Assembly (NCBI RefSeq): GCF_006345805.1 | Contig: NC_042999.1 | Location: 96,224,001 to 96,288,000, forward strand | Length of the DNA: 64,000 nt | DNA from: Octopus sinensis | Lineage: Eukaryota | Direction: 5' to 3' | Part shown: positions 2,965 through 56,235 of the stretch, one piece after another | Layout of the letters: each line of letters starts with the position of its first letter | How positions within the stretch are numbered: position 1 is the stretch's first letter | Translations under genes and position numbers: made by a program | The notes under the pieces: model-generated | What the model was told of the DNA's origin: nothing | Seen by the model: only the letters and a program-made list of their open reading frames with translations | The model's database searches: none

Positions 2965-4611
2965 TGGTATGTGTGCCTGTGTGTGTGTTTTGTATTATGA
3001 ACATGAAAATACATTTTTTGTCAATTTTCAGTTGTGTGAAAATTATAAAGCTTTCCACTAATACTTGTATTTTTTGACAGGTTCATTTTTTTATCTATTT
3101 TTTTAATGTATTATTATTGATCTTTATTGTATTCTGCCTTCTATTTATGATGATGTTGGTGACAGTAGTTGCTAGTTTCACTAAAATCATTTGCTCTTTT
3201 AAAGCAATTCAGATTTTCCCTCTTCCTTATAGAGATTCTCATTTCAAATGCTATGTCAGTTGATCTAAATGTTATTGTTTACATGATTTGTAACAAGTCA
3301 AAAAGTTTATTATTGCTAATCAGTTGCTTTTATCTGTGCCATAAATCTTGAAATGAGTGAGGCCAGATTGACATCAGTCAATGCAAACTCAATCCTAAAG
3401 CATTGAACAGAAATCTTTATTCCTGAAAAATGCTGTTTTGTTTGTAGTTTGATAAAAGTATGAACATTTATATCTATTTAGTTCAGCTACTTATGCTTCA
3501 GAAAAGAAATATATATCAAAAGTATTTTTTAAATAAATACTTAGCTGTATTACAAATGTTAAATTGTTATAAAGTATTTTCTCTCATTTTAAATATTAAA
3601 TTACTTTTACTAAACTCATCACCATAGTAATCTTTCATTTACTCATAGACTTCTGATTAATTATATAATAATACTCTGCAATATAGCAACATATTTTGTC
3701 TATATATGTAAATATATAAATGTATTTGTTGACTGCTATTTATATTGGCAAATAAATTCCTACCCATGTGTATGTTACAACATTAAACAAACCAATACAA
3801 TAAAATGTCAATACGTGCTTCAATATTATATATCAACCAATATACACTTTAACAAAGTAGAATACCAATCAATGTAAAGATATATCAAACTCTTTAGTTC
3901 TCTTCTTTCTATTGCACCACACACAAAATAAATATAATCTTCTTCTGCTCACATATAGTATTTTTCAGACTTACATGATGGTAGGAAAGCTATATAATAG
4001 GATGGGTGTAATGGTAATAAATAAGCATGTATTTCAGTGAATAAAGTGTAGTCAATCACAGAAATTTAGTTTAGTAATGGATGTTTCCAGCCAGTTCAGC
4101 TACTAAGATCTAAAACATTTCAACTGAAATATTGAACACAACCACTTCAACAATATTGCTTACTTAAAGACTATAGCTTCAACTTTTCAACTCTAGATTC
4201 ATACAAAATAGCTCTTATGGCAGCCAATTTGAACCACAACAGTTTAAAAGACGAAACAATTCTATTGGAGGGACATAAGGAAATGCTTATGATATTCATA
4301 GAATGTATCAACATAAATTGTATGATAGCATGGCATGTTTATACTTTGTTATATGACTGATAAAGTAGTGAAGAACAAATTATTGTGTTTTGCAAACTGT
4401 AATAGCTATCTGAGTGTAATAATATATTTATAACAGTGTGCAAAGTTTTTTCTGATCAAGGTATACTTTTGTAACAATAAACAGTTTGTATCAATATTTA
4501 CATAAATCCTAGAAAAAGCAATACAGAATTTTTCAATATCTATATTTATGTTTTGTTATAGTATTTTCAATTACACACATACACACACAAATTTCAAATG
4601 AAAGCAATCTT

Positions 4612-5539: not shown

Positions 5540-6478
5540 TGCACAACTGGACCCTTTCACCCAGTTTCCTTCCCTCTTATGATGCCATCCAGAATCTCTC
5601 TAGGTACAGATCTTCCTTGGTACCTCTTTTCTAATCATCTAAAATGATTTCATTCCTTATCCATGAATACTTTTCTCTCCCTGATATTAATATACACTTT
5701 CAATGATACACCTTGCCACTGAGCCACCAAATTGCCTCTCCAACATTCTCTTTCTGCTCAGGCACTACACTTACCTTTCTCTCTGCACACACACTCCATA
5801 CCTAACCACGTGTTATCTCTTCCATCATTCTTCTATCTAATGTACTATCATTACAATTCTGCTGATCTATACTGTCAGTCATCTCTTGATCCTCTTACCT
5901 CTCCTAACTCATTGTCAGCCATCCTTTAATCCTACCCAACCTTTGCAGTGGTTGTCTCCCTTCCCTCACCTATTCCCCATTGCTCACTCACCCATGTTCC
6001 CCTGCAATCTCCACCCTGCCACACTCTTGGTCTCTGTTCCACTTCTACCCACCCAGTACCTTGAGGGTCCACTCTGACACCATTACTTTTTTCTTTTTCC
6101 AACTCCTACTTGATCACCTCTTCCCTGTCTGTGAAGATGTGAGTAGTTATGCTACAGCAAGAAACCTGGTCTGCTCTGGCCCTGTCTCATAATTTTACCT
6201 CCAATCTCCTTACATGAAACTGCCCCTCCTTCCCTCTGGGTCCATAGCTTTGCAAGCTGAATAGCAATCTCACTAGTGCTGGTGGCTTGGAAAATGCACA
6301 GAGTATCAACCGCAAATTGTTTGGTATTAAGAAATGCATCCAACTGTAGAAATTATGCTAAAACAGACTGGAACACAATGCAGTCTTTTGACCTAGCAGA
6401 AACTTTCAAACTGCCTAACCCATGCCAGCCTGGAACATGGACATTAAATGATGATGATGCTGCTGAAGATTTATGCTT
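5540..6478 (+). mobile_element. Degenerate RTE-type LINE 3' UTR, sense orientation
   Basis: Pyrimidine-rich body, then ttggtattaagaaatgcatccaactgtagaaa...ccatgccagc...atgatgatgatg tail; reverse complement of the minus-strand RTE tails. Confidence 0.65.
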
Positions 6479-9600: not shown

Positions 9601-10878
9601 TTTCATCAGCATCATCTTCCTGCTATGGTCCATTATCATCGTCATTGTTTAAAGTCCTTCCATGCTTGCATGGTTTGAATAGTTTGACAGGAGCTGGCCA
9701 GGTGGAAGCCTGCACCATGCCTCTGTGTCTGTTTTGACATGGTTTTCATGGCTGGATGCCTTTCCTAACACCAACCACTCCATAGAGTGGGCTGAGTGCT
9801 TTTTAAGTGGCGAACATTTTATTGCTGGATGCCCTTCCAAATGCCAACCACTATATTGTGTGGACTGGGTGCTATTTAAGTGGCACCTGCACTGGTGGGG
9901 TCACTAAGTGACTTTGCAACACAAAGAGTCTTTGAGATGAGAGGGGGGGGGCATTGTGTCAGATGATGAAAAATTCAAGTGTAACAGAGAAGTAGAAACA
10001 GATATCATGCTGTAGAGGAGGTCTATGGCTACCCAGACAGAGAGAGGGAGAGAGAGAAGAGAAAGAGAGCAAGAATTAAAAAGAATGAGGGCAGAAACAG
10101 TTACCTGAAGAGAGAGAGAGAGAGAGAGAGAGAGGGAATTAACAAGAAAGAGTTGTATTGCTGTAAAGGAGATACATGGTTACCTAGCCAGTGGTAAGAG
10201 CAAGGGAAGGAGGGAGTGAAAATGATCTAGAATGACAGAAATGGGTTTATTGCTGTAGGGGAGATACATGATTACTCAGCCAGAGGAGACAGCAAGGGAA
10301 ATGGAGAGAGAGTAGGAGACAGTAAGAGCAGGAGAGGGAAGGTGGGAAGTGCCATGGTATACTTGCAAGGAACAAGAGATCAGGGCATAGATGGGATGGT
10401 AGAGTTAGGAAGAGGGAGATGAATGGTGACAAGTGCTGGCAGGATGTTGCCAAGGAGTTGGAAGTGGGGGGGTGAAGGAATGTGGTGACTAGTGAGAATC
10501 TGGGTAGAAAGGGAGGGGACGGGAGAGGCAACAATACAGTTAGCAGGGTAGTGTGGATGGATTGGGGAGTGAGGAATGCTGTGACTGGTGAGAATCTGGA
10601 AATGTGAGCAGGGTAGCAAGGACTGGATTGGAGAGTGGGAGATAATCATAGTGTATGAAGAGAAACAGTTTGGGAAGGGGATATAGTTTGGTTTGTTGGG
10701 GTAGGGTGTGTGAAAGTTTTATTGTAATGTGTGGGTGGGCACAATACTTCTAGAACTAACTCAGGTTTGCTGACCTGGGGATGGGGATGTAGTTTGGTCT
10801 GTTGGGGTAGGGTGTGTGAAAGTTTTATTGTTGCATGTGGGTGGGACACAATACTTCTAGAATTCAGGTTTGCTGATA
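9601..10878 (-). mobile_element. 5'-truncated RTE LINE, 3' UTR only
   Basis: CAT-rich tail, 'gctggatgccttcctaacaccaacc' motif twice, purine-rich body, tandem ~106-bp unit at 10681-10876; colinear with the next copy. Confidence 0.75.
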
Positions 10879-10907
10879 TGTATGTGTGTGTGTATATATA
10901 TATATAA

Positions 10908-12560
10908 AATCATCATCATCATCATCATTGTTTAACATCCACTTTCTGTGCTGGCATGGGTGGGACACATTGACAGGAGCCAGCCAAGTAGAAGCTAGAA
11001 GCCTGCACCAGACTTCTGTGATTGTTTTGGCAGGATTTTTAAAAATAGATGCCCTCCCTAATACCAGTCACCCAGTAGAGTGGACTTAGTGCTTTTTATG
11101 TGGCACAAGCACAGACAAGGTTCATTTTGGAAAGGTTTTTACAGCTGGATGCTCTTCCAAATGCCAACCACTCAACAGTGTGGACTTTTTAATTTGCACC
11201 TGTTTTTTAATTTGCACCTGCACTGACAGGATCACCAAGTAACTTGCAAAACAAAAATCTTTTGAGAGGGGAGGGGGCACTGGAGGAGGTGATCTTGTAT
11301 CAGATGATGAAAGGTTATATTGAGACAGAGAGACAGAAACAGGCATCTTGCTGTAGAGGAGGTATGAGGTTACTCTGCCCAAGAGAGAGAGAGAGAGAGC
11401 TGGGTCAGGAATGAGGACAGAAACAGGTATGCTGCTGCAAAGGAGATACAGAACCTGAAAGAAGTTCAGGAGGAGAGAGTGTGGGAGACATCAGGATAGA
11501 AATGGTGGCAAAGTGCTGGGTATACTCACATGGGACAAGGATCAGAATATAAATGGGATGATCAAGTAAAGGCAGAGAGGGATATAGATGGTGGCAAGTG
11601 CCAGGGCATACCCTTGAGGTTCGAAGGTCATAATATAAGTGGCAGGATAGAGCCAAAGAAGTGTGATTAGAAAGTAGGGAATGGAAGTGAGTGATGAAAA
11701 CCTGGGTATATAGAATGTGCAGTGGGGAGCACTGGAGAGCAATGATACAGAGAAACAGGGCTGTGAGGACAAGATGACAGGATTGGGGAGTGAGAGGTAG
11801 GCATAGGGCAAGGAGGAGGAAATGTGTGGAAGCGAAAAGATATAGATTGGTTTGTTGGAGTAGGGTAAGTGAAAAGTTTTCTTGTTACATGTGGGTGGAA
11901 CACAAGTTGGGGGCTGGCAGATAGCAATGATACAGATGTAGTTTGGTTTGTTGAAGTACAGTGTGTAAGAACTTTTCTTATGTGTGGGTGGGACTCACTG
12001 CTTCTAGAACTCAGTTTCACTGACTTAGGCAGGTCTCCTCAATCTTATATCGCCAGATATCTCATTCCATTGCCATTTCCTCTGTGAGACCCAACACCCT
12101 AAGATCTGTCCTTACCATTCATCCCATGTTTTCCTGGGTCTCCCTCTTCCACAGGTACCATCCACTTTCAGTGATCAGGACTTCTTTATGCAATTGTCCT
12201 TATTCATACGCATCACATGTCCAAACCAATGTAGTCTTCTCTCTTGTATGTTACATTTGATTCTTCTTACACCCAACTTTTCTCTCAATACATTTGCACT
12301 TTGTTGTACATGCACACTGATGATGCACATTCAATGGAGTATACTGCCTTAATTTCTCTCCAGTCTGCACATGTCTTCTCCATTCAAAGCCCATGTCTCA
12401 CTACCATGGAGTATAGCTGTTTACGCACAAGCAACATACAGTCTACCTTTCACTCTGAAAGAGAGTCCTTTTATTGCCATCAAAGTTAAATAGCTCTCTG
12501 AAACTTCTTCCACCCTATTTTTATTCTAGAAACAATACTTTCAGAGCATCCTCCACCATT
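10908..12560 (-). mobile_element. 5'-truncated RTE LINE with ORF2 C-terminus and ~1.15-kb 3' UTR
   Basis: Minus strand reads GGGCSESIVSRIKIGWKKF, QERRLHWFGHVMRMNKDNCIK and a GRGRPRKTW-like end (frameshifted); (CAT)n tail at 10908-10928. Confidence 0.85.
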
Positions 12561-19712: not shown

Positions 19713-21185
19713 TAAAAATTAAGCAAATATTAATCACTCTTAGTTTAGCCAACTGAACAGAGTATGCATTGATAAGTAGGTCTAATAAACCCGAAACATA
19801 TCCATTGCTTTTATCAGTTAACTTTAGAGACCATATTAATTCTCTTCAATATTGATCAAAACTTTTGATCTGCTAATCTTAAAGGAATTTTGCTTACTGA
19901 TTGCTTTGATAATCACTGCTGAGCAAAGTTGTTCAACTTAATCTATTACATGTGTATGATACAACTGTATGTATCAAGTATGCAGGCACCCCTGAGATAA
20001 TTTCCTTCAGTCATTGTTATGACTAACATTCATTCAAACAACATACATTCAAATTTCCTATTACAATCTGATATTAAACAAAATGCTAAACTATGTTACA
20101 TCAACATCATTTAATATCCGTTTTCTATGCTAGAGGCTTGACAGGAGATGACAAACCAGAGCTCTAAGTCTACTCTGGTGTGGATGTTCTTCCTACTGCC
20201 AACTTTCAATTAAGCTCATGGAAACAAAACTGAATTTTCACAATAATACACTAGAATTACTGAGTTTCTGAAAGTATGTGAAAGTTTCAAAAATTTGATA
20301 GTGTAAAAATGTATTTCATTAAAATTTGCATATTATAAGTAAGAAATTTATGAAAATGAGATTAGAGCTTCAAGTAGTGGATAAAATAAACCCATACAGA
20401 AATTTATTTTCTTCATTTAAGATTTGCTTACCCAAACTTCAGCTCTTGTTGTTTATTAAGATAATTAACATTTTAGAAACTAGTTACTTTTTTAACCTGG
20501 GATAGATTATTACAGACATGAATTAACTATCTTCACTAAATCAATTTCTCTTTTTCTCTCACTCTCCATATGTGTGTGTGTTTATATTTTCAATTAAACA
20601 ATGTCTCAAATATGCACAACAGTACAATTCAAGTTTAGTGGTTCCTCTTTATTGTTAAAAATATATTCAAAATTATTGATGGCAGCCAATGCTGTTATAG
20701 TGCATATATTTAAGCTTTGCTACATTGCACCAATAGTAGCAGTTCATGCAGCATCCATGAATCATATTGCAGCAACATATGTATTATTGAGAAACTGTTT
20801 CATTGATATAAATATTTGTGAATCTGTGCAATAAATGCCATGCTAGATATCTGCTACCATAGCTGTTATTTACAAGTAGTATTCATATGCTGCAACTATG
20901 GTCATTTTGCATTTAAGTAATCATTGCAGTAGCTATATCATCGTTTTTATGCAAGCATTGTTCTGTAGTACCCACATTAGATTTGCTATTTTCAAAACAT
21001 GTTAGCAATGTGCAGCTTCTAAGTAAGCATTGCTGTACACCTAATTCCAAAGCTTTATTGTGAACTATCTATATATTAAATCCGATATTATATCTATATG
21101 CTATACATTATCTTCTGTTTTCAGTGGTTAAGCCAGCATCCCAAATTTGAATGCTTATATCTAACTATTTCATATTTTCTTGCAG

Positions 21186-21344
21186 ACAATATTGGTTGGA
21201 GTGGATGAAAAGTCAACAGTTCAAGATCTCCTGGAATTTGTATGCTCAAAACGAGGTCTTAGTACAGCTGATCATTTTGTACGGTTACAAGTATCTCAGG
21301 GCAATTACAGCATCCCACATAGATGTGAACTAATAAAAAAGCTG
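21186..21344 (+). CDS. sif: sif/TIAM exon: Ras-binding domain (TILVGVDEKSTVQDLLEFVCSKRGLSTADHFVRLQVSQGNYSIPHRCELIKKL)
   Basis: Acceptor ttttcttgcag|, donor CTG|gtaagt; 159 nt, phase 0-0; RBD-like 'TVQDLLEFVCSKRGL...HFVRL'. Confidence 0.88.
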
Positions 21345-21366
21345 GTAAGTTCTAAAGATAATGATA

Positions 21367-21560
21367 ATCCTTTCTACTATAGGCACAAGGCATGAGATTT
21401 GGGGGGAGGGGTACCAAAGCTGACATCGATTCTAGTGTTCAACTGATACTTATTTTATCAAACTTGAAAGGATGTAAGGCAAAATTGACCTTGGCAGAAT
21501 TTGAACTCAGCTACTAAGCATTTTGTCCAGTGTTCTAACTATCCTGCCACCTCACCACCT
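21367..21560 (-). mobile_element. tRNA-derived SINE, family B
   Basis: Minus strand gives aggtggtgaggtggcaggatag (A-box-like) and gagttcaaattctgcc (B-box-like); similar copies at 34130-34265 (+) and 44565-44780 (-). Confidence 0.75.
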
Positions 21561-23710: not shown

Positions 23711-24505
23711 ATCATCATCATTCTCATTTAAGTCCACTTTCCATGCTGGCATGAGTTGGATGGGTTGACTGGGGGTTGGCAAGCCAGAAGGCTGTACCAG
23801 GCTCCAGTCCAATCTGGCAAAGTTTCTACAGCTGGATGCCCTTCCTAATACCAACCACTCCAAGAGTGTAGTGAGTGCTTTTTACATTCCACTGGCACAA
23901 GTGCCAGTCAGGTGGTACAGGCATCGACCACGCTTGAATGGTACTTTTTACATGCCACCAGCACAGAACCCAGTCAGGTAGCACTGGCAATAACCACGCT
24001 TGAATGGTGCTTATTATGTGCCACCAGCATGGAACCAGTCAACCGGCACTGGTATCGACCATGCTTGAATGTGCCACTGGCATGGGTGCCAATCAGGTGG
24101 TACTGTCATCGGCCATAACAATGATTTCACTTGCCTCAACAGATCTTTGCAAGTGCAGTTTATTGCCCAATGATTGAAAGGTACTCTTAAATGGGCTGGT
24201 TATGGTGCACTGGCATAGGCCATGGTTAAGGACTCACTTGGTTTGGTGGGTCTTCTCAAGCACAGCATATCTCCAAGGGTCTCAGTCATTGCCTCGGTGA
24301 GGCCCAATGTTCAAAGGTTGTGATTCACCACCTCATCCCAGGTCTTCCTGGGTCTACCTCTTCCACAGGTTTCCACTACTGCTAGGGTGTGACACTTTTT
24401 CACACAGCTGTCCTCAACCATACACAACACATGACCATACCAGCACAGTTGCCTCTCTTGCACACCATATCTGATGCTTCTTGAGTGCAACTTTTCTCTC
24501 AGAGT
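23711..24505 (-). mobile_element. 5'-truncated RTE LINE with ~600-bp 3' UTR containing 4 tandem ~64-bp units
   Basis: ORF end STLREKL...VQERQLCWYGHVLCM...CGRGRPRKTWDEVV (24311-24505); (CAT)n tail at 23711. Confidence 0.87.
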
Positions 24506-25350: not shown

Positions 25351-25534
25351 ATATATATCTAAATAAATGATAGAAGATAGTGATAATTGAGGTCTAATGC
25401 ACCATTCATTTCTTATGACCAGTAGGTGCTGCTAAAACATGGCAGTAATAGAGTTGTAGTTTTCATAATCAAGAGTTGATAAACTGACACAAGAATCTAA
25501 ATTGCTTTCTATCTGTGGGTATGAATGCCAATTC

Positions 25535-25765
25535 ATCATTATCATCATCATTTAACGTCCGCTTTCCATGCTAGCATGGGTTGGACGATTTTGACTGAGG
25601 GCTGGCTAACCAGACAGCCGCACCAGGCTCTAATCTTGATCTGGCAGAGTTTCTACAGCTAGATGCCCTTCCTATTGCCAACCACTCCAAGAGTGTAGTG
25701 GGTGATTTTTACGTGCCACCGGCACAGGGCCAGTCAGGCGGTACTGGCAATGACCTCGCTCGAAT
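25535..25765 (-). mobile_element. Short, young RTE 3' end
   Basis: (CAT)n-tttaacgtccgctttccatgctagcatgggttggacg, nearly identical to 27053; one gtgccaccggcac unit. Confidence 0.85.
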
Positions 25766-26723: not shown

Positions 26724-26904
26724 AAATATGAAGCCATTGAAGTCTGCCAGAAAAGTTTGTTTCACATTGAACTAACGAAATCAGTGGCAGATCCTGAATT
26801 TGGCTTCCGAGTGGAGGCAGAATTATCAGATCACTATGATAAGGATGATGAATTACAAGTTTATGTATGTGAGATCAAACCAGGAGGTTTAGCTCATCGG
26901 AAAG
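26724..26904 (+). CDS. sif: sif/TIAM exon: RBD end and N-half of PDZ (KYEAIEVCQK...PEFGFRVEAEL...GGLAHRK)
   Basis: Acceptor tcttcttcag|, donor AAAG|gtcatt; 181 nt, phase 0-1; EFGF is the GLGF-loop equivalent. Confidence 0.88.
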
Positions 26905-27052
26905 GTCATTAGAGTTTCATCTTTTATTATTAAAAATATATATTTGTGTGTGCATCTAATATTAGCCCTTTCTTAGTCAACATATGAAAGCTATTTTAAT
27001 ACAATGGCTTCATGTCATTCTTCACAAGCAAATCTTGTTAATAAGAGATAAT

Positions 27053-27455
27053 TCATCAGCATCATCATCATTTAGCGTCCGCTTTCCATGCTAGCATGGG
27101 TTGGACGGTTCAACTGGGGTCTGTGAAGCCAGAAGGCTGCATCAGGCCCAGTCTGATCTGGCAGTGTTTCTACAGCTGGATGCCCTTCCTAACGCCAACC
27201 ACTCCATGAGTGTAGTGGGTGCTTTTTACGTGCCACTCGCACCGGTGCCAGACAGAGCTGGCAAACGGCCACGGACGGATGGTGCTTTTTACGTGCCACC
27301 GGCACGGGGGCCAAGCGAGGCTGGCAACGGCCACGAATGGATGGTGTTTTTTACGTGCCACTGGCACGGAGGCCAGTCAGGGCGGCGCTGGCAATGGCCA
27401 CGATCGGATGGTTCGCTTACTTGTCACCGGCACTGGTATCACAGCTGCAATTTCT
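27053..27455 (-). mobile_element. Young CpG-rich RTE 3' end with ~3.5 tandem 62-67-bp units
   Basis: (CAT)n tail; units start at ~27218, 27281, 27343, 27410; the two central units carry gtgccacYggcac, the outer ones are degenerate. Confidence 0.85.
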
Positions 27456-27913
27456 ATTGATGTTGATCGACTTCGATTTTGGTTCTGCTTTCTGATATCT
27501 GATTTGATTTGGTTTGATTTTGATTGTCAATATAAAACATTTTGAATAGCTTCTGCAAATCAAAGACTAAAACATTTATTATAAAAAAAAATTTTTCAGA
27601 CTAATTTCATCTAATTTTAGAGATAGAAGATCTCATGAAATGGGAGAAAGTCAAAATCAAAAGTGCTTATGGGTTAACTTAAAACTGAAAAACATCACAG
27701 ATGCAAATAACCAACAGATAATTCTATCAAAATACATGGATATATATATGTACACACACACACACACAAATGTAGGTATTTTTTCAATGTGTACAAATAA
27801 CATGGAAAAAATAAATAGTTACCAGGGTAGCTAAAATTCACATAAGTACCAAGGATGTTACACCATACTTATAAAGGTATAAATTCCAGGGTTAAGTGGA
27901 ATGTTTTTGTATA

Positions 27914-28458
27914 ACATAGATAAATTAAGAAATGGAGTTAAACGCAGGTGTTTTTCAAATCTTTATACTTCCGACATATTTTTCGAAGAAAACATTGATA
28001 TTATTCTGGAGGGAATAAAAATGATGTAAATCAATGCAATCATCTTGTCAGGGAAAAAAAGAGAAATAAAAAAGCACATCAGTAAGTCATTTTAACTGAA
28101 TGTGATTACGACATATATAATGAAGGGGAACACTGGCAAGTTATTTTTTAAAAAACTAATAGATTTAATGTCAAAGACAATTTAGAGAATTGCCTTTGAT
28201 ATTAAATCTATTAACATTTTTTTAAAAAATAACTTGCCAGCATTCCACTTCATCATATATGTCGTAATCACATTCAGTTAAAATGACTTACTGCTGTGTT
28301 TTTTTTTTCTTTTTTTTTACCCTGATGGGGTGATTGCATTGTTTTACATCATTTTATTCCCTCCAGAATAATATCAGTATTTTCTTTGAAACATATGTTG
28401 GAAGTATAAAGATTTGAATAACACCTCCATTTAACTCCATTTCTTAATTTATCAATGT
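27914..28458. repeat. Long near-perfect inverted repeat (foldback), arms ~270 bp, 5-nt loop
   Basis: 27914-28182 is the reverse complement of 28188-28458, e.g. cagtaagtcattttaactgaatgtgattacgacatatat (28080) versus atatatgtcgtaatcacattcagttaaaatgacttactg (28255); loop tagag. Confidence 0.95.
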
Positions 28459-28495
28459 ATGTATGTATGTATCTATCTATCTATATATATATTTA

Positions 28496-28527
<32 letters not shown>

Positions 28528-29239
28528 GGTGTGTGTGTTTAATATTATTTCTTTATTTCACATAAATGAAATCTATAGAGAAGTATCAAATGCCTGTATG
28601 AAAGACATAAACAAATATGTAACTATTCAAAACATATAACTCAGTGCATTGCAAATTTAGCTCACTTTTGCTTCTCTTCTAATACTCTATTTAATAATTT
28701 TGCTAAAATGAAATGGTGCTCAACAAAAATATTATTGTAGTTGGCATAATATCAGAGTAAATTATTATTGAAAATTAACTCTAATCCTGAACTGAAGCAA
28801 TATTAGTAAGGAGGTCCTATAAGAGAAAGGTTCAAACAGTATACAGGTCCAGATCCCAAAAAGTTGAATAAGTTATAAATATCTGTCAGGCTGTTTTTTT
28901 TTTTAATCATAAACCCAGGCTGCTTTTAATATCAAAGAGATATAGATCCCAACCAGTCCAGATTGAGCCTATACTGTCTTACTTCAATTAGATGTCATTA
29001 TTTAGACAAATGCTATCAGCAGTAGCTGAAGCAGTTTAATGATAGATTTAGACTCTTGAAGTAATAGCTTGGCTAGTATGTTTTTAGTTTCAGTGGTTAT
29101 GACACTGAATATATCTATAATCTTTTCAGAAAAAAATTTGAACATTTTGTAAGAATCATTAGTTTTCATATTGTATGTGAATTGCAAATCACTCCTAAAT
29201 ATGCAAGGTTTAGTTGTAAGATTTCTTTCTTACTCCATT

Positions 29240-29450
29240 CTGTGGTTCATCTGTCATTAATGACCATGGACAGGGTTCCTCATTGTGCACCCTACTTGAA
29301 CAGTGTTGTCTGTCACTGAACAGTTTGATCTGCAAATGGCAGCCTCTTTCACAAAAGCTGCAATTGTGACTCGTTCCAGTACTGTTTAAGTTGTTGTTTT
29401 TCCTTGGTCTTATCTCTTCAGTATAGAATGTTCAATGGGATTCAGTCCTG
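29240..29450 (-). mobile_element. Second RTE-clade LINE 3' end relic
   Basis: Minus strand HNCSFCERGCHLQIKLFSDRQHCSS resembles the C-terminal CxxC..H..C motif of RTE ORF2. Confidence 0.5.
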
Positions 29451-31224
29451 GGTGATATGATATGGAAGACAGGTTTTTGTCTATGCAGCATGTTTTCCCT
29501 CTCCACACTACTGATGCAGCCAACGGAATAGGTTGGCCATTACAATTTCACACTAGCATCAACATAGGAGTTGCCAGAATGAGGTTGTTGACAACATTGG
29601 ACTGCCTCTAAGACTCCAACTCCCAATTTTTTCTCTGGGTTTACTCTCAAAGTCTTCCCCACAGCTGGATATGGCCACAAGGTGGTTGGGGTTTGGAATC
29701 AGAGTTTTCCTTCTTCTAGATGGGCTGCCAGCCCCTGAGCTAATGAGCTCTATCTGCCCTGACTGACTTGCTAATTAAGCTTAGCTGAGACCTGACAGGT
29801 GTCATTATTTCAGGTCAGGGTAGACCTGGGAACAGTGTTATCTTGCCTTTTACTTTTTTCTATCTTAAACAGTCATAGTGTATTTTCAGAGTTAGTGAGA
29901 AGAGTTTGAAGAGACTCCAGCAACTGGATTAGCTGTAAATTTAATTGCATTTGAAAATAATGGAAAGTGATTACCTGTTGTCATTGGATGTATTTTAGTT
30001 TCCGGCTTCACAACAATAAAAAGTAGATTTACTTGGCCGTGAACATCTTTCAAAGTATCCAGAAATAAGTTGTTTATTTCTCTTTGTATGATCAAATATA
30101 TTATCTGTTTATTTCATACACATTTGGAGTTTTTATTGGAAGATGATGCATTAAATTGTTAGTATCAAGTAAAATATTGGTTTTAGCCTTATTTCATTTA
30201 TTTATTACATATTTTATCCTTTTTGTAGTTAAAATATGTTGAAAATATTCAATGATTTTTTAGTATTCTATCATTGTAGTTCTTATCCTTGTTTAGTTCT
30301 AGATTAGCCCTCATCAAGCAAACCTATGATCAAAGGCATTCCAGCTGTGACTTTCCATCTTTTGCTTAACATGTCTTTTTAAGACATAGGTATGATTAGA
30401 GGGAGATTAAGCTGCTATTTTTAGCAAGACAAATGATCTTGTAGCAGTTTCTCTCTTTTCTTTCAGTGGATAAATATTTTACTTCCCTTTTTTGTTTTTA
30501 GGTTTTGTAAGTAATGATTAAGTTAAAAACACAAGAATTCTTTATAACTTTTAAGAGGTTGTGTCATTTCCAAATTGGGCTTATTTCTGATATAGATGTT
30601 GGTTTTACTATCATAACTCACCAGTAGTATAATTATTACAATGATGTTGCTTAACTGTTGATCTGCCATTCAGGTAAGAGTGAATGTTGATATTCTCTTA
30701 TTCTTATATTGTTATTTATTTTCTTTCTTTGAGATCAATTGATATGGTGTTTTTCAATAGCTAACTTGTGTATTTATGAGAAGAATATTCATGTATATGC
30801 ATGCACATACACATGTCATTAATGTGTTCAGACACACAGTCACACATTTATACATATGTATGATGACATATTTCAATCCTATAGCATTTATAATACTTTT
30901 AGAAACATGTTTACTCAAAAATGAACCATGCTTTTTCTCTTTTTTATTAATGTATCAGATGAAGCAGAGCAGTTTGCATGACCTTGCAGGCTCTTGCAAA
31001 TTAGTGATATTGGTAGCTAATGTCTATTGACCTTCAGTATGTTAATATCTATTAGGAAAACATTAATTGAGGAGGTATTGTAAAAAGACGCAGTGATATG
31101 GAAGAATGGCTAAGATTTTAGAGTGAGATATTGTAGGACACAACAGGAATGCTTAGGATATGGATGTGTGTAAGCTTTTTCATCATTGCTTCTAAGTTTT
31201 TTTTTTTATTTTCTTAATTTGCAG

Positions 31225-31482
31225 GGTTGATTCCTGGGGATGAAATTTTAATCATCAATGGAAAGATAGTCTCAGAGCTTGATATGGTATTCATTGAAGC
31301 CTTGCTTCATGAATCCCATTCTTTATGTATGACGGTTCAAACCTGTCGTGTTCAGGTTCCAACTGTGGTCAATGCAGGAGGGCCGTCAGCAGATACCAAT
31401 GACAGCATTATCCAAAATACCATTGGCACTCCTCCACAGCCTAGAGACAAAGCCTTAGCTGATTTGTCTGTAGGCTCTCCAG
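31225..31482 (+). CDS. sif: sif/TIAM exon: C-half of PDZ (GLIPGDEILIINGKIVSELDMVFIEALL) and linker
   Basis: Acceptor taatttgcag|, donor CCAG|gtaata; 258 nt, phase 1-1; GDEILxING PDZ signature. Confidence 0.92.
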
Positions 31483-36596: not shown

Positions 36597-37140
36597 TCTC
36601 ATCATCATCATCATCATCATCATCATTTAATGCTCATCTTCTATGCATGCATTGGTAGAACAGTTAACATGAGCTGGACAAGTAGATGACTACTCCAGAC
36701 TACTGAGTCTGTTTTGGCAAGATTTTTATGGCTGGATGCCTTTCCTAATACTGACCACTCTGCACAGTAGACTCAGTGCTTTTTATATGGCACTATCACA
36801 GGCAAGATTAGTTTTGGCATCATTTTTACAGCTGGATGCCCTTCCAAATGCCAACCACTTTACAGTGTGGATTGGATGCTTTTTACATGGCACCAGCCCT
36901 GACAGAGTCATCAAGTAACTTGCAGGACAAGGAATTTTGAGAAGGGCAGGAACATTTGAGGATGGAACTTGTGCCAGAAGATGAAAGGTTAGAGTGTGAT
37001 AGAGAGACAGAAATAGGTATCTTGCTATAACAGTGATCTGGTGTCAGATGATGAATGGTTAAAGCATGACAGAGAAATAGAAAGGCAGAAACAAGTGTCT
37101 TGCTATAGAGGAGGTATATGGTTACCCAGCAAGAAAGAGA
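36597..37140 (-). mobile_element. RTE 3' UTR fragment (long-UTR type)
   Basis: (CAT)n tail, duplicated gctggatgcc..ccaaccact motif; colinear with 9601 and 10908. Confidence 0.75.
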
Positions 37141-43419: not shown

Positions 43420-43745
43420 CATCACCATCCTCATTTAATATTTGTTTTCCGTGTTGGCATGTGTTGGATGGTTTGAGAGGAGCTGGCAAAGCTGGAAGCC
43501 ATACCAGGTTTCATTGCCAATTTTGGCATGGTTTCTACAGCTGGATACCCTTCTTAATGCCAACCACTTAACCAGTGCTTCTTATGTGGCACCAGTACCT
43601 TGCAAGATAAAAACCTCTCAACTGGGAGGGAAGTAGTAGAATTGAGGGTGTATGGCTTTGAGCCAATTGAGAGATTTAAGGTATAGAAGGGACTGATATA
43701 AATGTCTTGTAGAGCAGATACATGGATTCCCCAGTTGGAAAACAA
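43420..43745 (-). mobile_element. RTE 3' UTR fragment
   Basis: catcaccatcctcatttaat...ctacagctggatacccttcttaatgccaaccac; same family as 36597. Confidence 0.7.
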
Positions 43746-53970: not shown

Positions 53971-54284
53971 CAGTAATTCTCAACCATATGACCCCTGGGG
54001 ATCCATATAAAGTTTTGTGGGGGTCCATACTTGCAAAATAGTAAATTGAGGATCCACAGTAGTATGTTAAGGTTCCATGAAAAACTTTTGCTTTAGGTGT
54101 ATTTATTGAAAGAAACAGATTTCTTTCTCTAATGTTTTACATGATTTAACCTACACAAGTGAATGTGTGGAAAGCAAAATAGGAATTTTGAAAGAAGATT
54201 TTATAAAACTAGTTTTTAAACATTGAATGGCATAAGAATAGTAATCAGATGGGTCCATACATAAAAAATTGTTGAGAACCACTG
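53971..54284. mobile_element. hAT (Charlie-like) MITE, 314 bp
   Basis: TIRs cagtaattctcaac / gttgagaaccactg (12/14); 8-bp flanks tgctagat / ccctagat (6/8, CTAG core typical of Charlie-type TSDs). Confidence 0.8.
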
Positions 54285-54727
54285 CCCTAGATGTTAAGTT
54301 TAAATCCCAATATTTATTGTTGTATATAAGGTTTTTTGGGGAAAAAAATTTGACAGTAATGACAAAGAACGGAGCAATTGATGTTGACAATCTCTGGGTT
54401 CCTACAACATTTTACATTTATGAAGTGGTTTCTAATAGAAAACCTGTAACCGTTTTTGAACCAGTGTTATTAAAGAGAGACAGTGAGTGGGGCTTGTAAT
54501 CATATTGATGCTAATTTAGGTCTCATGCAAAATAGAGTTGTTTTCTTTCACTCAGAAAATTTCATGCTGCTGTTTCTCAACATCAGTTATTCCATTTTCT
54601 CTCATAATTGTCAAATTTTATTTCCCAAAAACCCTTATGAACAATAATGAATAATATGATTTAAACTTGACATCTAGGACAGTGGTTCTCAACAATTTTT
54701 TCACATATGGACCTGCCTAATTACTAT
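54238..54727. repeat. Inverted repeat, arms ~54238-54390 and ~54574-54727
   Basis: gttgagaaccactgccctagatgttaagtttaaatc versus gatttaaacttgacatctaggacagtggttctcaac; similarity continues ~110 bp beyond the MITE end. Confidence 0.88.
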
Positions 54728-55511
54728 AGTATCTGTCATTATATAACATGGTGTGCATTCTATTTTGATCTCTATCCAATCTAGTTCCATTTTGTTTTGT
54801 TATGATGCTTTCTATTACTTTCTCAGTTTGATTCATTGACTTAAAACTTCTTGGTTTCCTGAATTTATTCATTTTCTTTACCATGTGTATTAATTCACAA
54901 TGGTAATGTTTTCAGTTACCTGTAATGGCAAAATTCCTGTACAATTTGATTTGCTGAAAAAAAAGCAATGCGAATGAGACCAGCCATTCTGGTATTTACA
55001 TCTCAGTAATTATTGCTGAAGATGTTGCATCATATCTTGTTTTTTTTTTTGTGTCCTTAATCATTTCACTATAAAATGTTTTTCATACCTGGCTACTCTC
55101 TTGTCATCATGAAAACAAACTCTTCCATGTCATTTTTAATCTTTATCTGATAGTGAGCTCTAAAAATTACTTATCCTCTTGCAACTAAAAAGTTATAATT
55201 ATTGATAATTTTAATAGCATTTCTGTATCTATTAACGTAGCTCAATTAAGTAATATAGTAAAGATAACATGTTACCAGTATTTTATTTTATGTTCACATT
55301 TTCATATCAATAGACATCATATTACTCTTAGCTAACCACACTAAGATTACAGTAAACTGTAAAAAGAAATATTCCAAGTGATTGTAAGACATTGTAAATA
55401 TTACTGTTGCTGATAATGTTATTGTTGTTTATGTTTCTTCCTTTAAAACATGCTTTTTCTTTTTGTTTTATACTAATTGACATTATATTTCTTTTTTTCA
55501 ATTTTCTTTAG

Positions 55512-56235
55512 CACATCTGAGGCTAAAACGGATTTCATGAAAGTTATCAGACAGACTATTAGAGACAGTGTTCGAAAAATGGCCGTGCCATCAGCACGGC
55601 AGACTGCCAAAACCAAATACATTCCATTTGGTGGTAAGCGGCTTGAGTGTCTGGGAGCTAACCCACGCACTCTCAGTAAGATGCGTGGTGGATTAAAGGC
55701 TCCAGAGGTCGAAAGACATTCAGTGGATTTTGAGGAAAACTTCAACAACTGCGAGTACGACAGCATGTTTAGGACAAGAAGCAAAACAATAGGCAACCTG
55801 AATGAGGTGGCACAAGGAGAAGACAAGAATGAGAAAATAGCTGACCAGGTACCAGCCCGACCAGCTTCATCTATTGCTAACCCTTATAGCACAGCGCCTC
55901 ATGGAATGTCTAGCCGGCATCTAAGAGCTGCTGCACGAGAGCAGTCAGGTTCCAGGCCAACCTCACCAAGGCCCACCAGTGGGTCCCCAGTTTGGAAACC
56001 ACGCCAGGACCCCAGTGGCTTTGGCATTTCAGGTACAAGCAAACCGGGGACACCAACGCAAGTTCTGCCCTCACATGCTGTTGCCAGTGCACTAAGCAGC
56101 TCTGAGGCTTCAACACCAACTACATCATCAGCATATGGAGATTACTCTGATGTTGTCTACCGGGCTGATACCCCTAGTCGGGTGATCACGCACCAGCCCT
56201 CCCATTGCATCGCCTACAAGGACACTGAGTGCTGA
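55512..56235 (+). CDS. sif: sif/TIAM last coding exon: PH C-terminal helix (TSEAKTDFMKVIRQTIRDSVRKM) and S/P-rich tail ending YKDTEC*
   Basis: Acceptor ttttctttag|, phase 2 (TG+C=Cys); 724 nt to TGA at 56233-56235; matches the 252-aa ORF. Confidence 0.92.

What the first reader, a model, noticed from the sequence alone, without database searches (positions are those of the whole stretch)
27914..28458. ~545-bp near-perfect foldback in the intron that splits the PDZ domain
Seen: ~270-bp arms, roughly 85-90% complementary by eye, with a 5-nt loop and no resemblance to the other repeats in the window. Several mismatches on the transcribed strand are A:C or G:U. At least three CpGs kept in the left arm (aaacgc, ttccga, ttcgaa) have decayed to TG/CA in the right arm. 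Established: long duplexes with A:C mismatches are preferred ADAR substrates and can yield hairpin endo-siRNAs; coleoids edit neural RNA extensively. Inference: an editing hotspot, hpRNA or splicing-modulating structure, or an unrecognised palindromic MITE.
Basis: partly seen in the sequence, partly recalled or inferred. Interest (0 to 1): 0.7.

Follow-up and report, generated by a model that had tools for sequence, protein, structure and literature searches.

The report
Aged 545-bp intronic DNA foldback
A real but ordinary 545-base hairpin-forming repeat sits in an intron of a Tiam/still-life gene; it looks like decaying junk DNA, probably a small transposon relic, and nothing found here shows it was kept for a function.

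Summary
The arms are 27914-28182 and 28188-28458 (269 and 271 nt), joined by a 5-nt loop, TAGAG. They are 89% complementary. The RNA fold is -341 kcal/mol, z = -38.6. No other copy lies in the window. The foldback sits in the 4320-nt intron that splits the PDZ domain of a Tiam/still-life gene on the + strand.

Everything I could test points to neutral decay:
- There are 17 transitions and 7 transversions, three of them CpG losses.
- G:U and A:C mismatches on the transcribed strand are balanced, 10 against 7 (p = 0.63).
- The + strand folds only 12 kcal/mol better than the - strand.
- Arm divergence (JC 0.096) is below intron divergence from the nearest relative found (JC 0.164), so the foldback post-dates that split.
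- Two more distant relatives have no foldback in the same intron.
- The arms match no protein-coding sequence.

The best reading is a relic of a palindromic, non-coding DNA transposon (MITE-like), or failing that a local inverted duplication. Its pre-mRNA hairpin would be an incidental ADAR or Dicer substrate. Copy number, the empty orthologous site, editing and small RNAs could not be tested. The coleoid origin could not be verified. Interest is low.

The parts
27914..28182 (.). Left arm of the foldback (269 nt, 28% G+C, 4 CpG)
28183..28187 (.). Central 5-nt spacer or loop, TAGAG
28188..28458 (.). Right arm of the foldback (271 nt, 27% G+C, 1 CpG), 89% complementary to the left arm
27908..27912 (.). 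Candidate left copy of a 5-bp target-site duplication, TGTAT, valid only if the element is taken as 27913-28459. Inconclusive.
28460..28464 (.). Candidate right copy of TGTAT. It lies inside an (ATGT)n run, so the match may be chance.
28459..28540 (.). Compound microsatellite (ATGT)n(ATCT)n(TA)n(TG)n that abuts the right arm. Its (TG)n end is shared with the relative L002/L003, whose contigs break there.
26905..31224 (+). Host intron (4320 nt, phase 1) that splits the PDZ domain. The foldback lies 1009 nt from the donor and 2766 nt from the acceptor.
26724..26904 (+). PDZ exon A of the Tiam/still-life gene (...VCEIKPGGLAHRKG)
31225..31482 (+). PDZ exon B (LIPGDEILIINGK...). Exon ends are inferred from AG/GT signals and the reading frame.

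Best explanation
The foldback is a genuine, evolutionarily aged, non-coding DNA palindrome in an intron of a Tiam/still-life gene. It is not an assembly artefact.

Its most likely origin is a palindromic non-autonomous DNA transposon, meaning a MITE-like or foldback element whose inverted repeats run to the centre. On this reading it inserted at the edge of a (TGTA)n-type microsatellite, after the lineage separated from the nearest relative I could find. Since then the two arms have drifted apart neutrally, to about 9% substitutions plus 4 indels, including methylation-type CpG decay.

When the gene is transcribed, the intron carries a hairpin of about 270 bp. Such a hairpin would be a generic, incidental substrate for ADAR hyper-editing and possibly for Dicer, like inverted repeat pairs and palindromic repeats in other animals. 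It would not be a structure maintained for a purpose.

Shown here: the structure, its position, the neutral-looking substitution pattern, and its youth relative to one relative.
Inferred: the transposon origin (my confidence is about 0.5), transcription within the pre-mRNA, and incidental editing. My confidence that there is no selected function is about 0.85.
For: Structure and significance:
- establish the arms, the loop and the fold.

Not an artefact:
- The arms differ at 24 substitutions, 17 transitions and 7 transversions. Three are CpG to TG/CA.
- The arms also differ by 4 indel events.
- This is a mutational pattern, not a sequencing-chimera pattern.

No selection for pairing:
- On the transcribed strand there are 10 G:U against 7 A:C mismatches, binomial p = 0.63.
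- The + strand folds at -341.3 and the - strand at -329.4 kcal/mol.

Young and lineage-specific:
- Arm distance is p = 0.090, JC 0.096.
- The flanking intron against the L002 ortholog is p = 0.147, JC 0.164.
- The orthologous intron of the more distant relative L001 (about 4.1 kb) has no inverted repeat of 40 nt or more.
- In the more distant relative L004 the intron is only about 0.4 kb.

MITE-like traits:
- It is 545 bp, 28% G+C and has no ORF above 42 aa.
- It has sharp ends and no internal tandem subrepeats.
- Joining the flanks gives a continuous TGTAT/GTATG microsatellite start, with a perfect 5-bp TGTAT on both sides.

Context from papers:
- Long near-perfect dsRNA loci are unusually common in the octopus.
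- A palindromic Harbinger repeat is heavily hyper-edited on its own in frog (PMC5625713).
Against: - No second copy of the arm sequence was found. It is absent from the 64-kb window and from about 30 kb of related contigs.
- A dispersed repeat next door (27050-27560) has at least 7 other partial copies in the same window.
- No spurious ORF echoes of the element exist in 5.8 billion predicted proteins.
- A 20-mer scan of metagenome contigs gave 4 matches, none extending beyond the 20-mer.
- The candidate TSD overlaps an (ATGT)n run. I estimate roughly a 0.1-0.25 chance of it arising under the offsets I allowed. That figure is my own estimate, not a computed one.
- The termini (ACATAGAT... / ...ATCAATGT) do not match any superfamily motif that I know.
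- The empty site in the near relative could not be seen, because its contigs stop in the (TG)n tract just right of the element.
Confidence: 0.5

Rival explanations
1. The foldback is a single-copy local inverted duplication. A stretch of about 270 bp of pre-existing intron was copied in reverse next to itself, by replication template switching or by hairpin-primed repair of a break. This left a short 5-nt spacer, and the two arms then decayed neutrally. RNA-level consequences would be as incidental as in the best explanation.
For: - No other copy was found anywhere I could search.
- A very short spacer is typical of snap-back events. This point rests on established knowledge, not on a test here.
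- The termini show no recognisable transposon motif.
- The candidate TSD may be a chance match within a microsatellite.
Against: - The flanks carry a perfect 5-bp TGTAT on both sides, which this mechanism does not predict.
- Size, base composition and absence of coding capacity are also those of MITEs.
- The sequence available for a copy search was far too small to exclude a low- or middle-copy family.
Confidence: 0.3
2. The foldback is a selected RNA element. It could be a hairpin-RNA locus giving endo-siRNAs. It could be an ADAR-recruiting 'editing inducer element' that raises editing in the neighbouring PDZ exons. It could also be a structure that modulates splicing of this intron.
For: - It is a very stable hairpin within a transcribed gene.
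- Long intronic stems can recruit ADAR to nearby sites in mammals (PMC5654063; PMC3479170).
- The + strand is slightly more stable than the - strand.
Against: - There is no excess of wobble over A:C mismatches, p = 0.63.
- Decay is dominated by CpG loss and transitions.
- The foldback is younger than the split from the nearest relative.
- It is absent from the same intron in two more distant relatives.
- The arms match no exon of the window and no protein, so no target is evident.
- It lies 1.0 and 2.8 kb from the splice sites and bridges nothing.
Confidence: 0.07
3. The foldback is an assembly or library artefact, such as a chimeric foldback read built into the assembly.
For: Palindromes with tiny loops are a known artefact class of long-read and amplified libraries. 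This rests on established knowledge. No independent assembly of this species could be found.
Against: - Artefactual foldbacks have near-identical arms or random error patterns.
- Here the arms differ by 9% in substitutions, with a transition bias and directional CpG decay.
- Unique intron sequence continues on both sides.
- The right flank is orthologous to a relative's intron.
Confidence: 0.03

Closest known systems
Palindromic MITEs and foldback-type non-autonomous DNA transposons, for example the palindromic Harbinger-derived repeat of Xenopus that is hyper-edited on its own (PMC5625713)
   Same: Small (545 bp), AT-rich and non-coding. The inverted repeats run to the centre. It lies in an intron and forms a long hairpin within one transcript.
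Inverted repeat pairs in introns and UTRs, such as inverted Alu pairs, as ADAR hyper-editing substrates
   Same: A long, imperfect intramolecular dsRNA made from repetitive DNA within a pre-mRNA. Function is usually incidental.
   Different: Here it is a single self-complementary unit with a 5-nt loop, not two separately inserted repeat copies. Editing was not measured.
Drosophila hairpin-RNA (hpRNA) loci that give endo-siRNAs
   Same: A long inverted repeat with a short loop, able to form a Dicer substrate.
   Different: Known hpRNAs derive from, and target, protein-coding genes. These arms match no protein and no exon in the window. There are no small-RNA data.
Editing inducer elements (long intronic stems that recruit ADAR; PMC5654063, PMC3479170)
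   Same: A long, stable intronic stem within about 1 kb of a coding exon.
   Different: Known inducer elements are evolutionarily conserved and pair with a defined edited site. This one is lineage-specific, decays neutrally, and has no known edited site beside it.
Drosophila Foldback (FB) elements
   Same: A foldback architecture with very long inverted arms.
   Different: FB arms are built from tandem subrepeats and are kilobases long. These arms have no internal tandem repeats and are 270 nt long.

Membership tests
MITE / palindromic non-autonomous DNA transposon | Terminal inverted repeats | tested here: met
   The arms, 27914-28182 and 28188-28458, are 89% complementary over their whole length.
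MITE / palindromic non-autonomous DNA transposon | Small size, no coding capacity, AT-rich | tested here: met
   The element is 545 bp with 27-28% G+C, and its longest ORF is 42 aa. Its three-frame translation has no protein match at E <= 1.
MITE / palindromic non-autonomous DNA transposon | Target-site duplication of fixed length flanking the element | tested here: inconclusive
   A perfect 5-bp TGTAT flanks the element if it is taken as 27913-28459. The right copy lies inside an (ATGT)n microsatellite. TA, or TAA against TAT, is also possible.
MITE / palindromic non-autonomous DNA transposon | Many dispersed copies in the genome | tested here: inconclusive
   No further copy was found in the 64-kb window or in about 30 kb of relatives' contigs. 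The four metagenome 20-mer hits do not extend. The genome itself cannot be searched with these tools.
MITE / palindromic non-autonomous DNA transposon | Empty orthologous site in a relative that lacks the insertion | not testable with these tools
   The only close relative's contigs (L002, L003) start in the (TG)n tract at window 28518-28539, immediately to the right of the element.
hpRNA (endo-siRNA hairpin locus) | Long inverted repeat with a short loop, in a transcribed region | tested here: met
   Searches give the structure. Transcription is inferred from its position in an intron of a + strand gene.
hpRNA (endo-siRNA hairpin locus) | Arms homologous to a target gene | tested here: not met
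   There is no protein match at E <= 1 among 5.8 billion sequences. There is no match to any exon of the window.
hpRNA (endo-siRNA hairpin locus) | 21-22-nt small RNAs from both arms | not testable with these tools
   No small-RNA data are available.
ADAR hyper-editing substrate | Long near-perfect intramolecular dsRNA in a transcript | tested here: met
   On the + strand 243 Watson-Crick and 10 G:U pairs form, with a longest perfect run of 39 bp and an energy of -341 kcal/mol.
ADAR hyper-editing substrate | Clusters of A-to-G mismatches in RNA-seq reads | not testable with these tools
   No RNA-seq data are available. The organism is not identified.
Editing inducer element | Evolutionary conservation of the stem next to an efficiently edited site | tested here: not met
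   Arm divergence (JC 0.096) is below the species divergence of the intron (JC 0.164). There is no inverted repeat in the L001 intron, and the L004 intron is only about 0.4 kb. No edited site is known.
Drosophila-type Foldback (FB) element | Arms composed of tandem subrepeats | tested here: not met
   Tandem Repeats Finder reports only a poly-T tract within the arms.

The most novel reading that the evidence does not exclude
The foldback is a young, lineage-specific cis-element that has been co-opted. Its 270-bp stem would recruit ADAR, acting as an editing inducer, and so raise recoding of the adjacent PDZ exons of a neuronal Rac-GEF. Alternatively it would be processed into endo-siRNAs. Either case would be an example of a transposon-born dsRNA being wired into the editing or RNAi system of an animal that edits heavily.
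Probability: 0.05. Interest if true: 0.55.

Novelty: new member of a known kind. Interest (0 to 1): 0.15.

Why it matters
As it stands, this matters little. Intronic inverted repeats that fold into long dsRNA are common in animal genomes, and reportedly especially so in octopus (PMC5625713). This one shows only neutral decay.

It has two practical uses. It is a clean single-locus test case for hyper-editing or Dicer processing of an intronic hairpin. It is also a caution for assemblers, because short-read contigs of the relative break right next to it. It would become interesting only if RNA data showed that it drives editing of the neighbouring PDZ exons or yields small RNAs.

Tried and rejected
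1. Copy number through predicted proteins. I searched a three-frame translation of the element, with stops replaced by X, against 5.8 billion proteins. Of 3181 word candidates, none scored E <= 1. This is weak negative evidence only.

2. Independent assemblies of the same species. Exact look-ups of window ORFs 27640-27834 and 27219-27545 found nothing on record.

3. The orthologous site.
- P0001 gave contigs L002 and L003, about 85% identical in the intron. Both contigs begin in the (TG)n tract just right of the foldback, so the site is invisible.
- P0002 gave L001, and P0003 gave L004. These are too distant for the introns to align. Neither has a foldback in this intron.

4. Metagenome scan. 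A 20-mer from the longest perfect stretch gave 4 hits, but none extends beyond 20 nt, so they are chance matches.

5. Rfam. Nothing reached a gathering score. The mir-297 hit (39 bits against a threshold of 90) is the TA/TG microsatellite. The plant MIR399 and MIR1520 hits merely reflect a hairpin.

6. Identifying the taxon.
- The DH-PH exons confirm Tiam/still life. The best named matches are Helobdella at 52% and spiders at 53%. All listed hits are 421 aa or shorter, so full-length annotated orthologs seem to be out of reach.
- A paper search for the run accession prefix found only an unrelated study.

7. tRNA or SINE origin of the arms. No tRNA-like sequence was found.

8. Extension of the palindrome into the flanking (TA)n(CA)n and (TG)n(TA)n tracts. 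I rejected this because the tracts are low-complexity and sit about 114 nt off symmetry.

9. The arms as an editing-complementary sequence for the PDZ exons. I rejected this because they have no complementarity to either exon.

Full report
**Observation**

The sequence at 27914-28458 is a near-perfect foldback.
- A local alignment of the left half against the reverse complement of the right half gives arms 27914-28182 and 28188-28458, separated by TAGAG.
- A global alignment of the exact arms has 243 matches, 24 mismatches and 6 gap columns in 4 events. That is 89.0% identity, with substitution distance p = 0.090 (JC 0.096).
- As RNA, the + strand folds into one continuous hairpin of -341.3 kcal/mol. 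Shuffles give -101 +/- 6, so z = -38.6.
- The longest perfect duplex run is 39 bp.
- Neither blastn with 7-mers nor nhmmer finds any other copy of either arm in the 64-kb window.
- The three left-arm CpGs (27942-3, 27972-3, 27984-5) are TG/CA in the right arm. The CpG count is 4 against 1.

**Setting**

The window carries a Tiam/still-life type Rac-GEF gene on the + strand.
- A Ras-binding-domain exon lies within the open frame at 21165-21392 (Pfam RBD).
- PDZ exon A is 26724-26904 and PDZ exon B is 31225-31482.
- DH-PH exons follow from about 36.1 kb to 53.7 kb, and a last exon lies within the open frame at 55477-56232.
- Exon A ends ...HRKG with donor GT at 26905. Exon B starts after AG at 31223-4 with LIPGDEIL....
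- The spliced product scores as PDZ over residues 24-99, with the junction at residues 61/62. Its best solved-structure match is the TIAM1 PDZ domain.
- The intron is 4320 nt, phase 1. The foldback starts 1009 nt after the donor and ends 2766 nt before the acceptor.
- The sense pre-mRNA therefore carries the + strand of the foldback. That it is transcribed is an inference from position.

**Is it maintained or decaying?**

- Of the 24 mismatches, 17 are transitions and 7 are transversions.
- If pairing were under selection on the transcribed strand, transitions that leave a G:U wobble should outnumber those that create A:C. They do not: 10 against 7, binomial p = 0.63.
- The + strand folds only 12 kcal/mol better than the - strand, -341.3 against -329.4.
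- Three of the transitions are CpG losses, the signature of germline methylation decay.
- This spectrum, together with 4 indels, also argues strongly against an assembly chimera. A chimera would give near-identical arms or random errors.

**Relatives**

A protein search with the spliced PDZ region returned only three ORF-type hits.
- P0001, identical in exon B, lies on two short-read contigs, L002 and L003. Their intron aligns to window 28529-31224 with p = 0.147 (JC 0.164).
- Both contigs begin in the (TG)n tract that ends the compound microsatellite abutting the right arm. The orthologous site is therefore not visible.
- The arm-to-arm distance is about 0.6 of this between-species distance. 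Under equal neutral rates, the foldback arose, or was last homogenised, after that split. I therefore predict an empty site in that relative.
- P0002 lies on a 105-kb contig (L001). There only the exons align, at 77-82%. Its intron of about 4.1 kb has no inverted repeat of 40 nt or more.
- P0003 (L004) has an intron of only about 0.4 kb at the same position.
- The intron position is therefore old, but the foldback is not.

**Origin**

The element is 545 bp with 28% G+C. It has no ORF above 42 aa, no internal tandem subrepeats and no tRNA-like part. Its three-frame translation matches nothing among 5.8 billion predicted proteins. These are the traits of a palindromic MITE.

Its ends are sharp. 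If the element is taken as 27913-28459, a perfect TGTAT flanks both sides. Joining the flanks then gives a continuous TGTAT-GTATG microsatellite start. The right copy lies in an (ATGT)n run, however, so I count this as inconclusive.

Against a high-copy family:
- No second copy lies in about 94 kb of own and related sequence.
- The dispersed repeat immediately upstream (27050-27560) has at least 7 other partial copies in the window.
- A metagenome scan with a 20-mer gave 4 hits that do not extend beyond the 20-mer.

A single-copy local inverted duplication therefore remains a serious rival.

**Function**

The hairpin is a competent generic substrate for ADAR and perhaps for Dicer.

Published work reports three relevant points.
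- Most hyper-editing across animals sits in long dsRNA made by inverted or palindromic repeats.
- Octopus has an unusually high density of such loci.
- A palindromic Harbinger repeat in frog is heavily edited on its own (PMC5625713).

Long intronic stems can also act as editing inducers in mammals, but those stems are conserved (PMC5654063). Here nothing indicates conservation, strand-specific pairing, a target gene or a splice-site relationship. I therefore commit to incidental dsRNA from a decaying repeat.

**Limits**

- The organism could not be identified. The best named matches to the DH-PH exons are a leech and spiders at 52-53%. The coleoid premise is therefore plausible but untested.
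- Genome-wide copy number could not be examined with the tools at hand.
- The empty orthologous site could not be examined.
- RNA editing could not be examined.
- Small RNAs could not be examined.
- Long-read support could not be examined.

**Verdict**

This is an ordinary feature of low interest.

Noticed in passing
window 54263-54390 and 54574-54701: A second long inverted repeat lies in a downstream intron of the same gene. Its arms are 128 nt, 83% complementary and 183 nt apart. It contains a CAGTGGTTCTCAAC motif and is unrelated in sequence to the foldback. It would also form dsRNA in the pre-mRNA.
   Followed up: partly
window 27050-27560; copies at 6318-6467 (-), 9631-9897, 10907-11173, 23711-24041, 25530-25765, 36815-36893, 43524-43568: A dispersed repeat lies in the same intron, just upstream of the foldback. 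It has 62-63-bp internal tandem units (TTACGTGCCACCGGCACGGG core). It has at least 7 other partial copies in the window, one of them inverted.
   Followed up: partly
window about 21165-56232, + strand: The window is largely one Tiam/still-life type Rac-GEF gene, with RBD, PDZ and DH-PH exons and a long last exon. The best named protein matches are only 52-53% identical (Helobdella, spiders). All listed database hits are 421 aa or shorter, so the organism could not be named.
   Followed up: partly
L002 443-1986, against window 28930/28933: The nearest relative carries about 1.5 kb in this intron that the window lacks. It is either an insertion there or a deletion here.
   Followed up: no
L002 3945-4076; window about 30890-31000: The relative has a 46-nt-arm hairpin (93% complementary) about 200-330 nt upstream of the exon B acceptor. 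The window keeps the right arm but lacks part of the left arm, with a 19-nt difference.
   Followed up: partly
window 28455-28525: There is a sub-threshold Rfam match to mir-297 (39 bits against a gathering score of 90). It falls on the TA/TG/ATGT microsatellite and most likely reflects the repeat, not a miRNA gene.
   Followed up: yes
window 10001-12000: This stretch has unusually high G+C (0.45) and a strong G over C skew (+0.48) on the + strand. It carries long low-complexity S/P/L-rich open frames on the - strand.
   Followed up: no
L001 4869-8985 and L004 about 3396-3776: The phase-1 intron that splits the PDZ domain (after ...KG / before LxPGD) sits at the same position in two more distant relatives. 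Its length ranges from about 0.4 kb to about 4.3 kb.
   Followed up: partly
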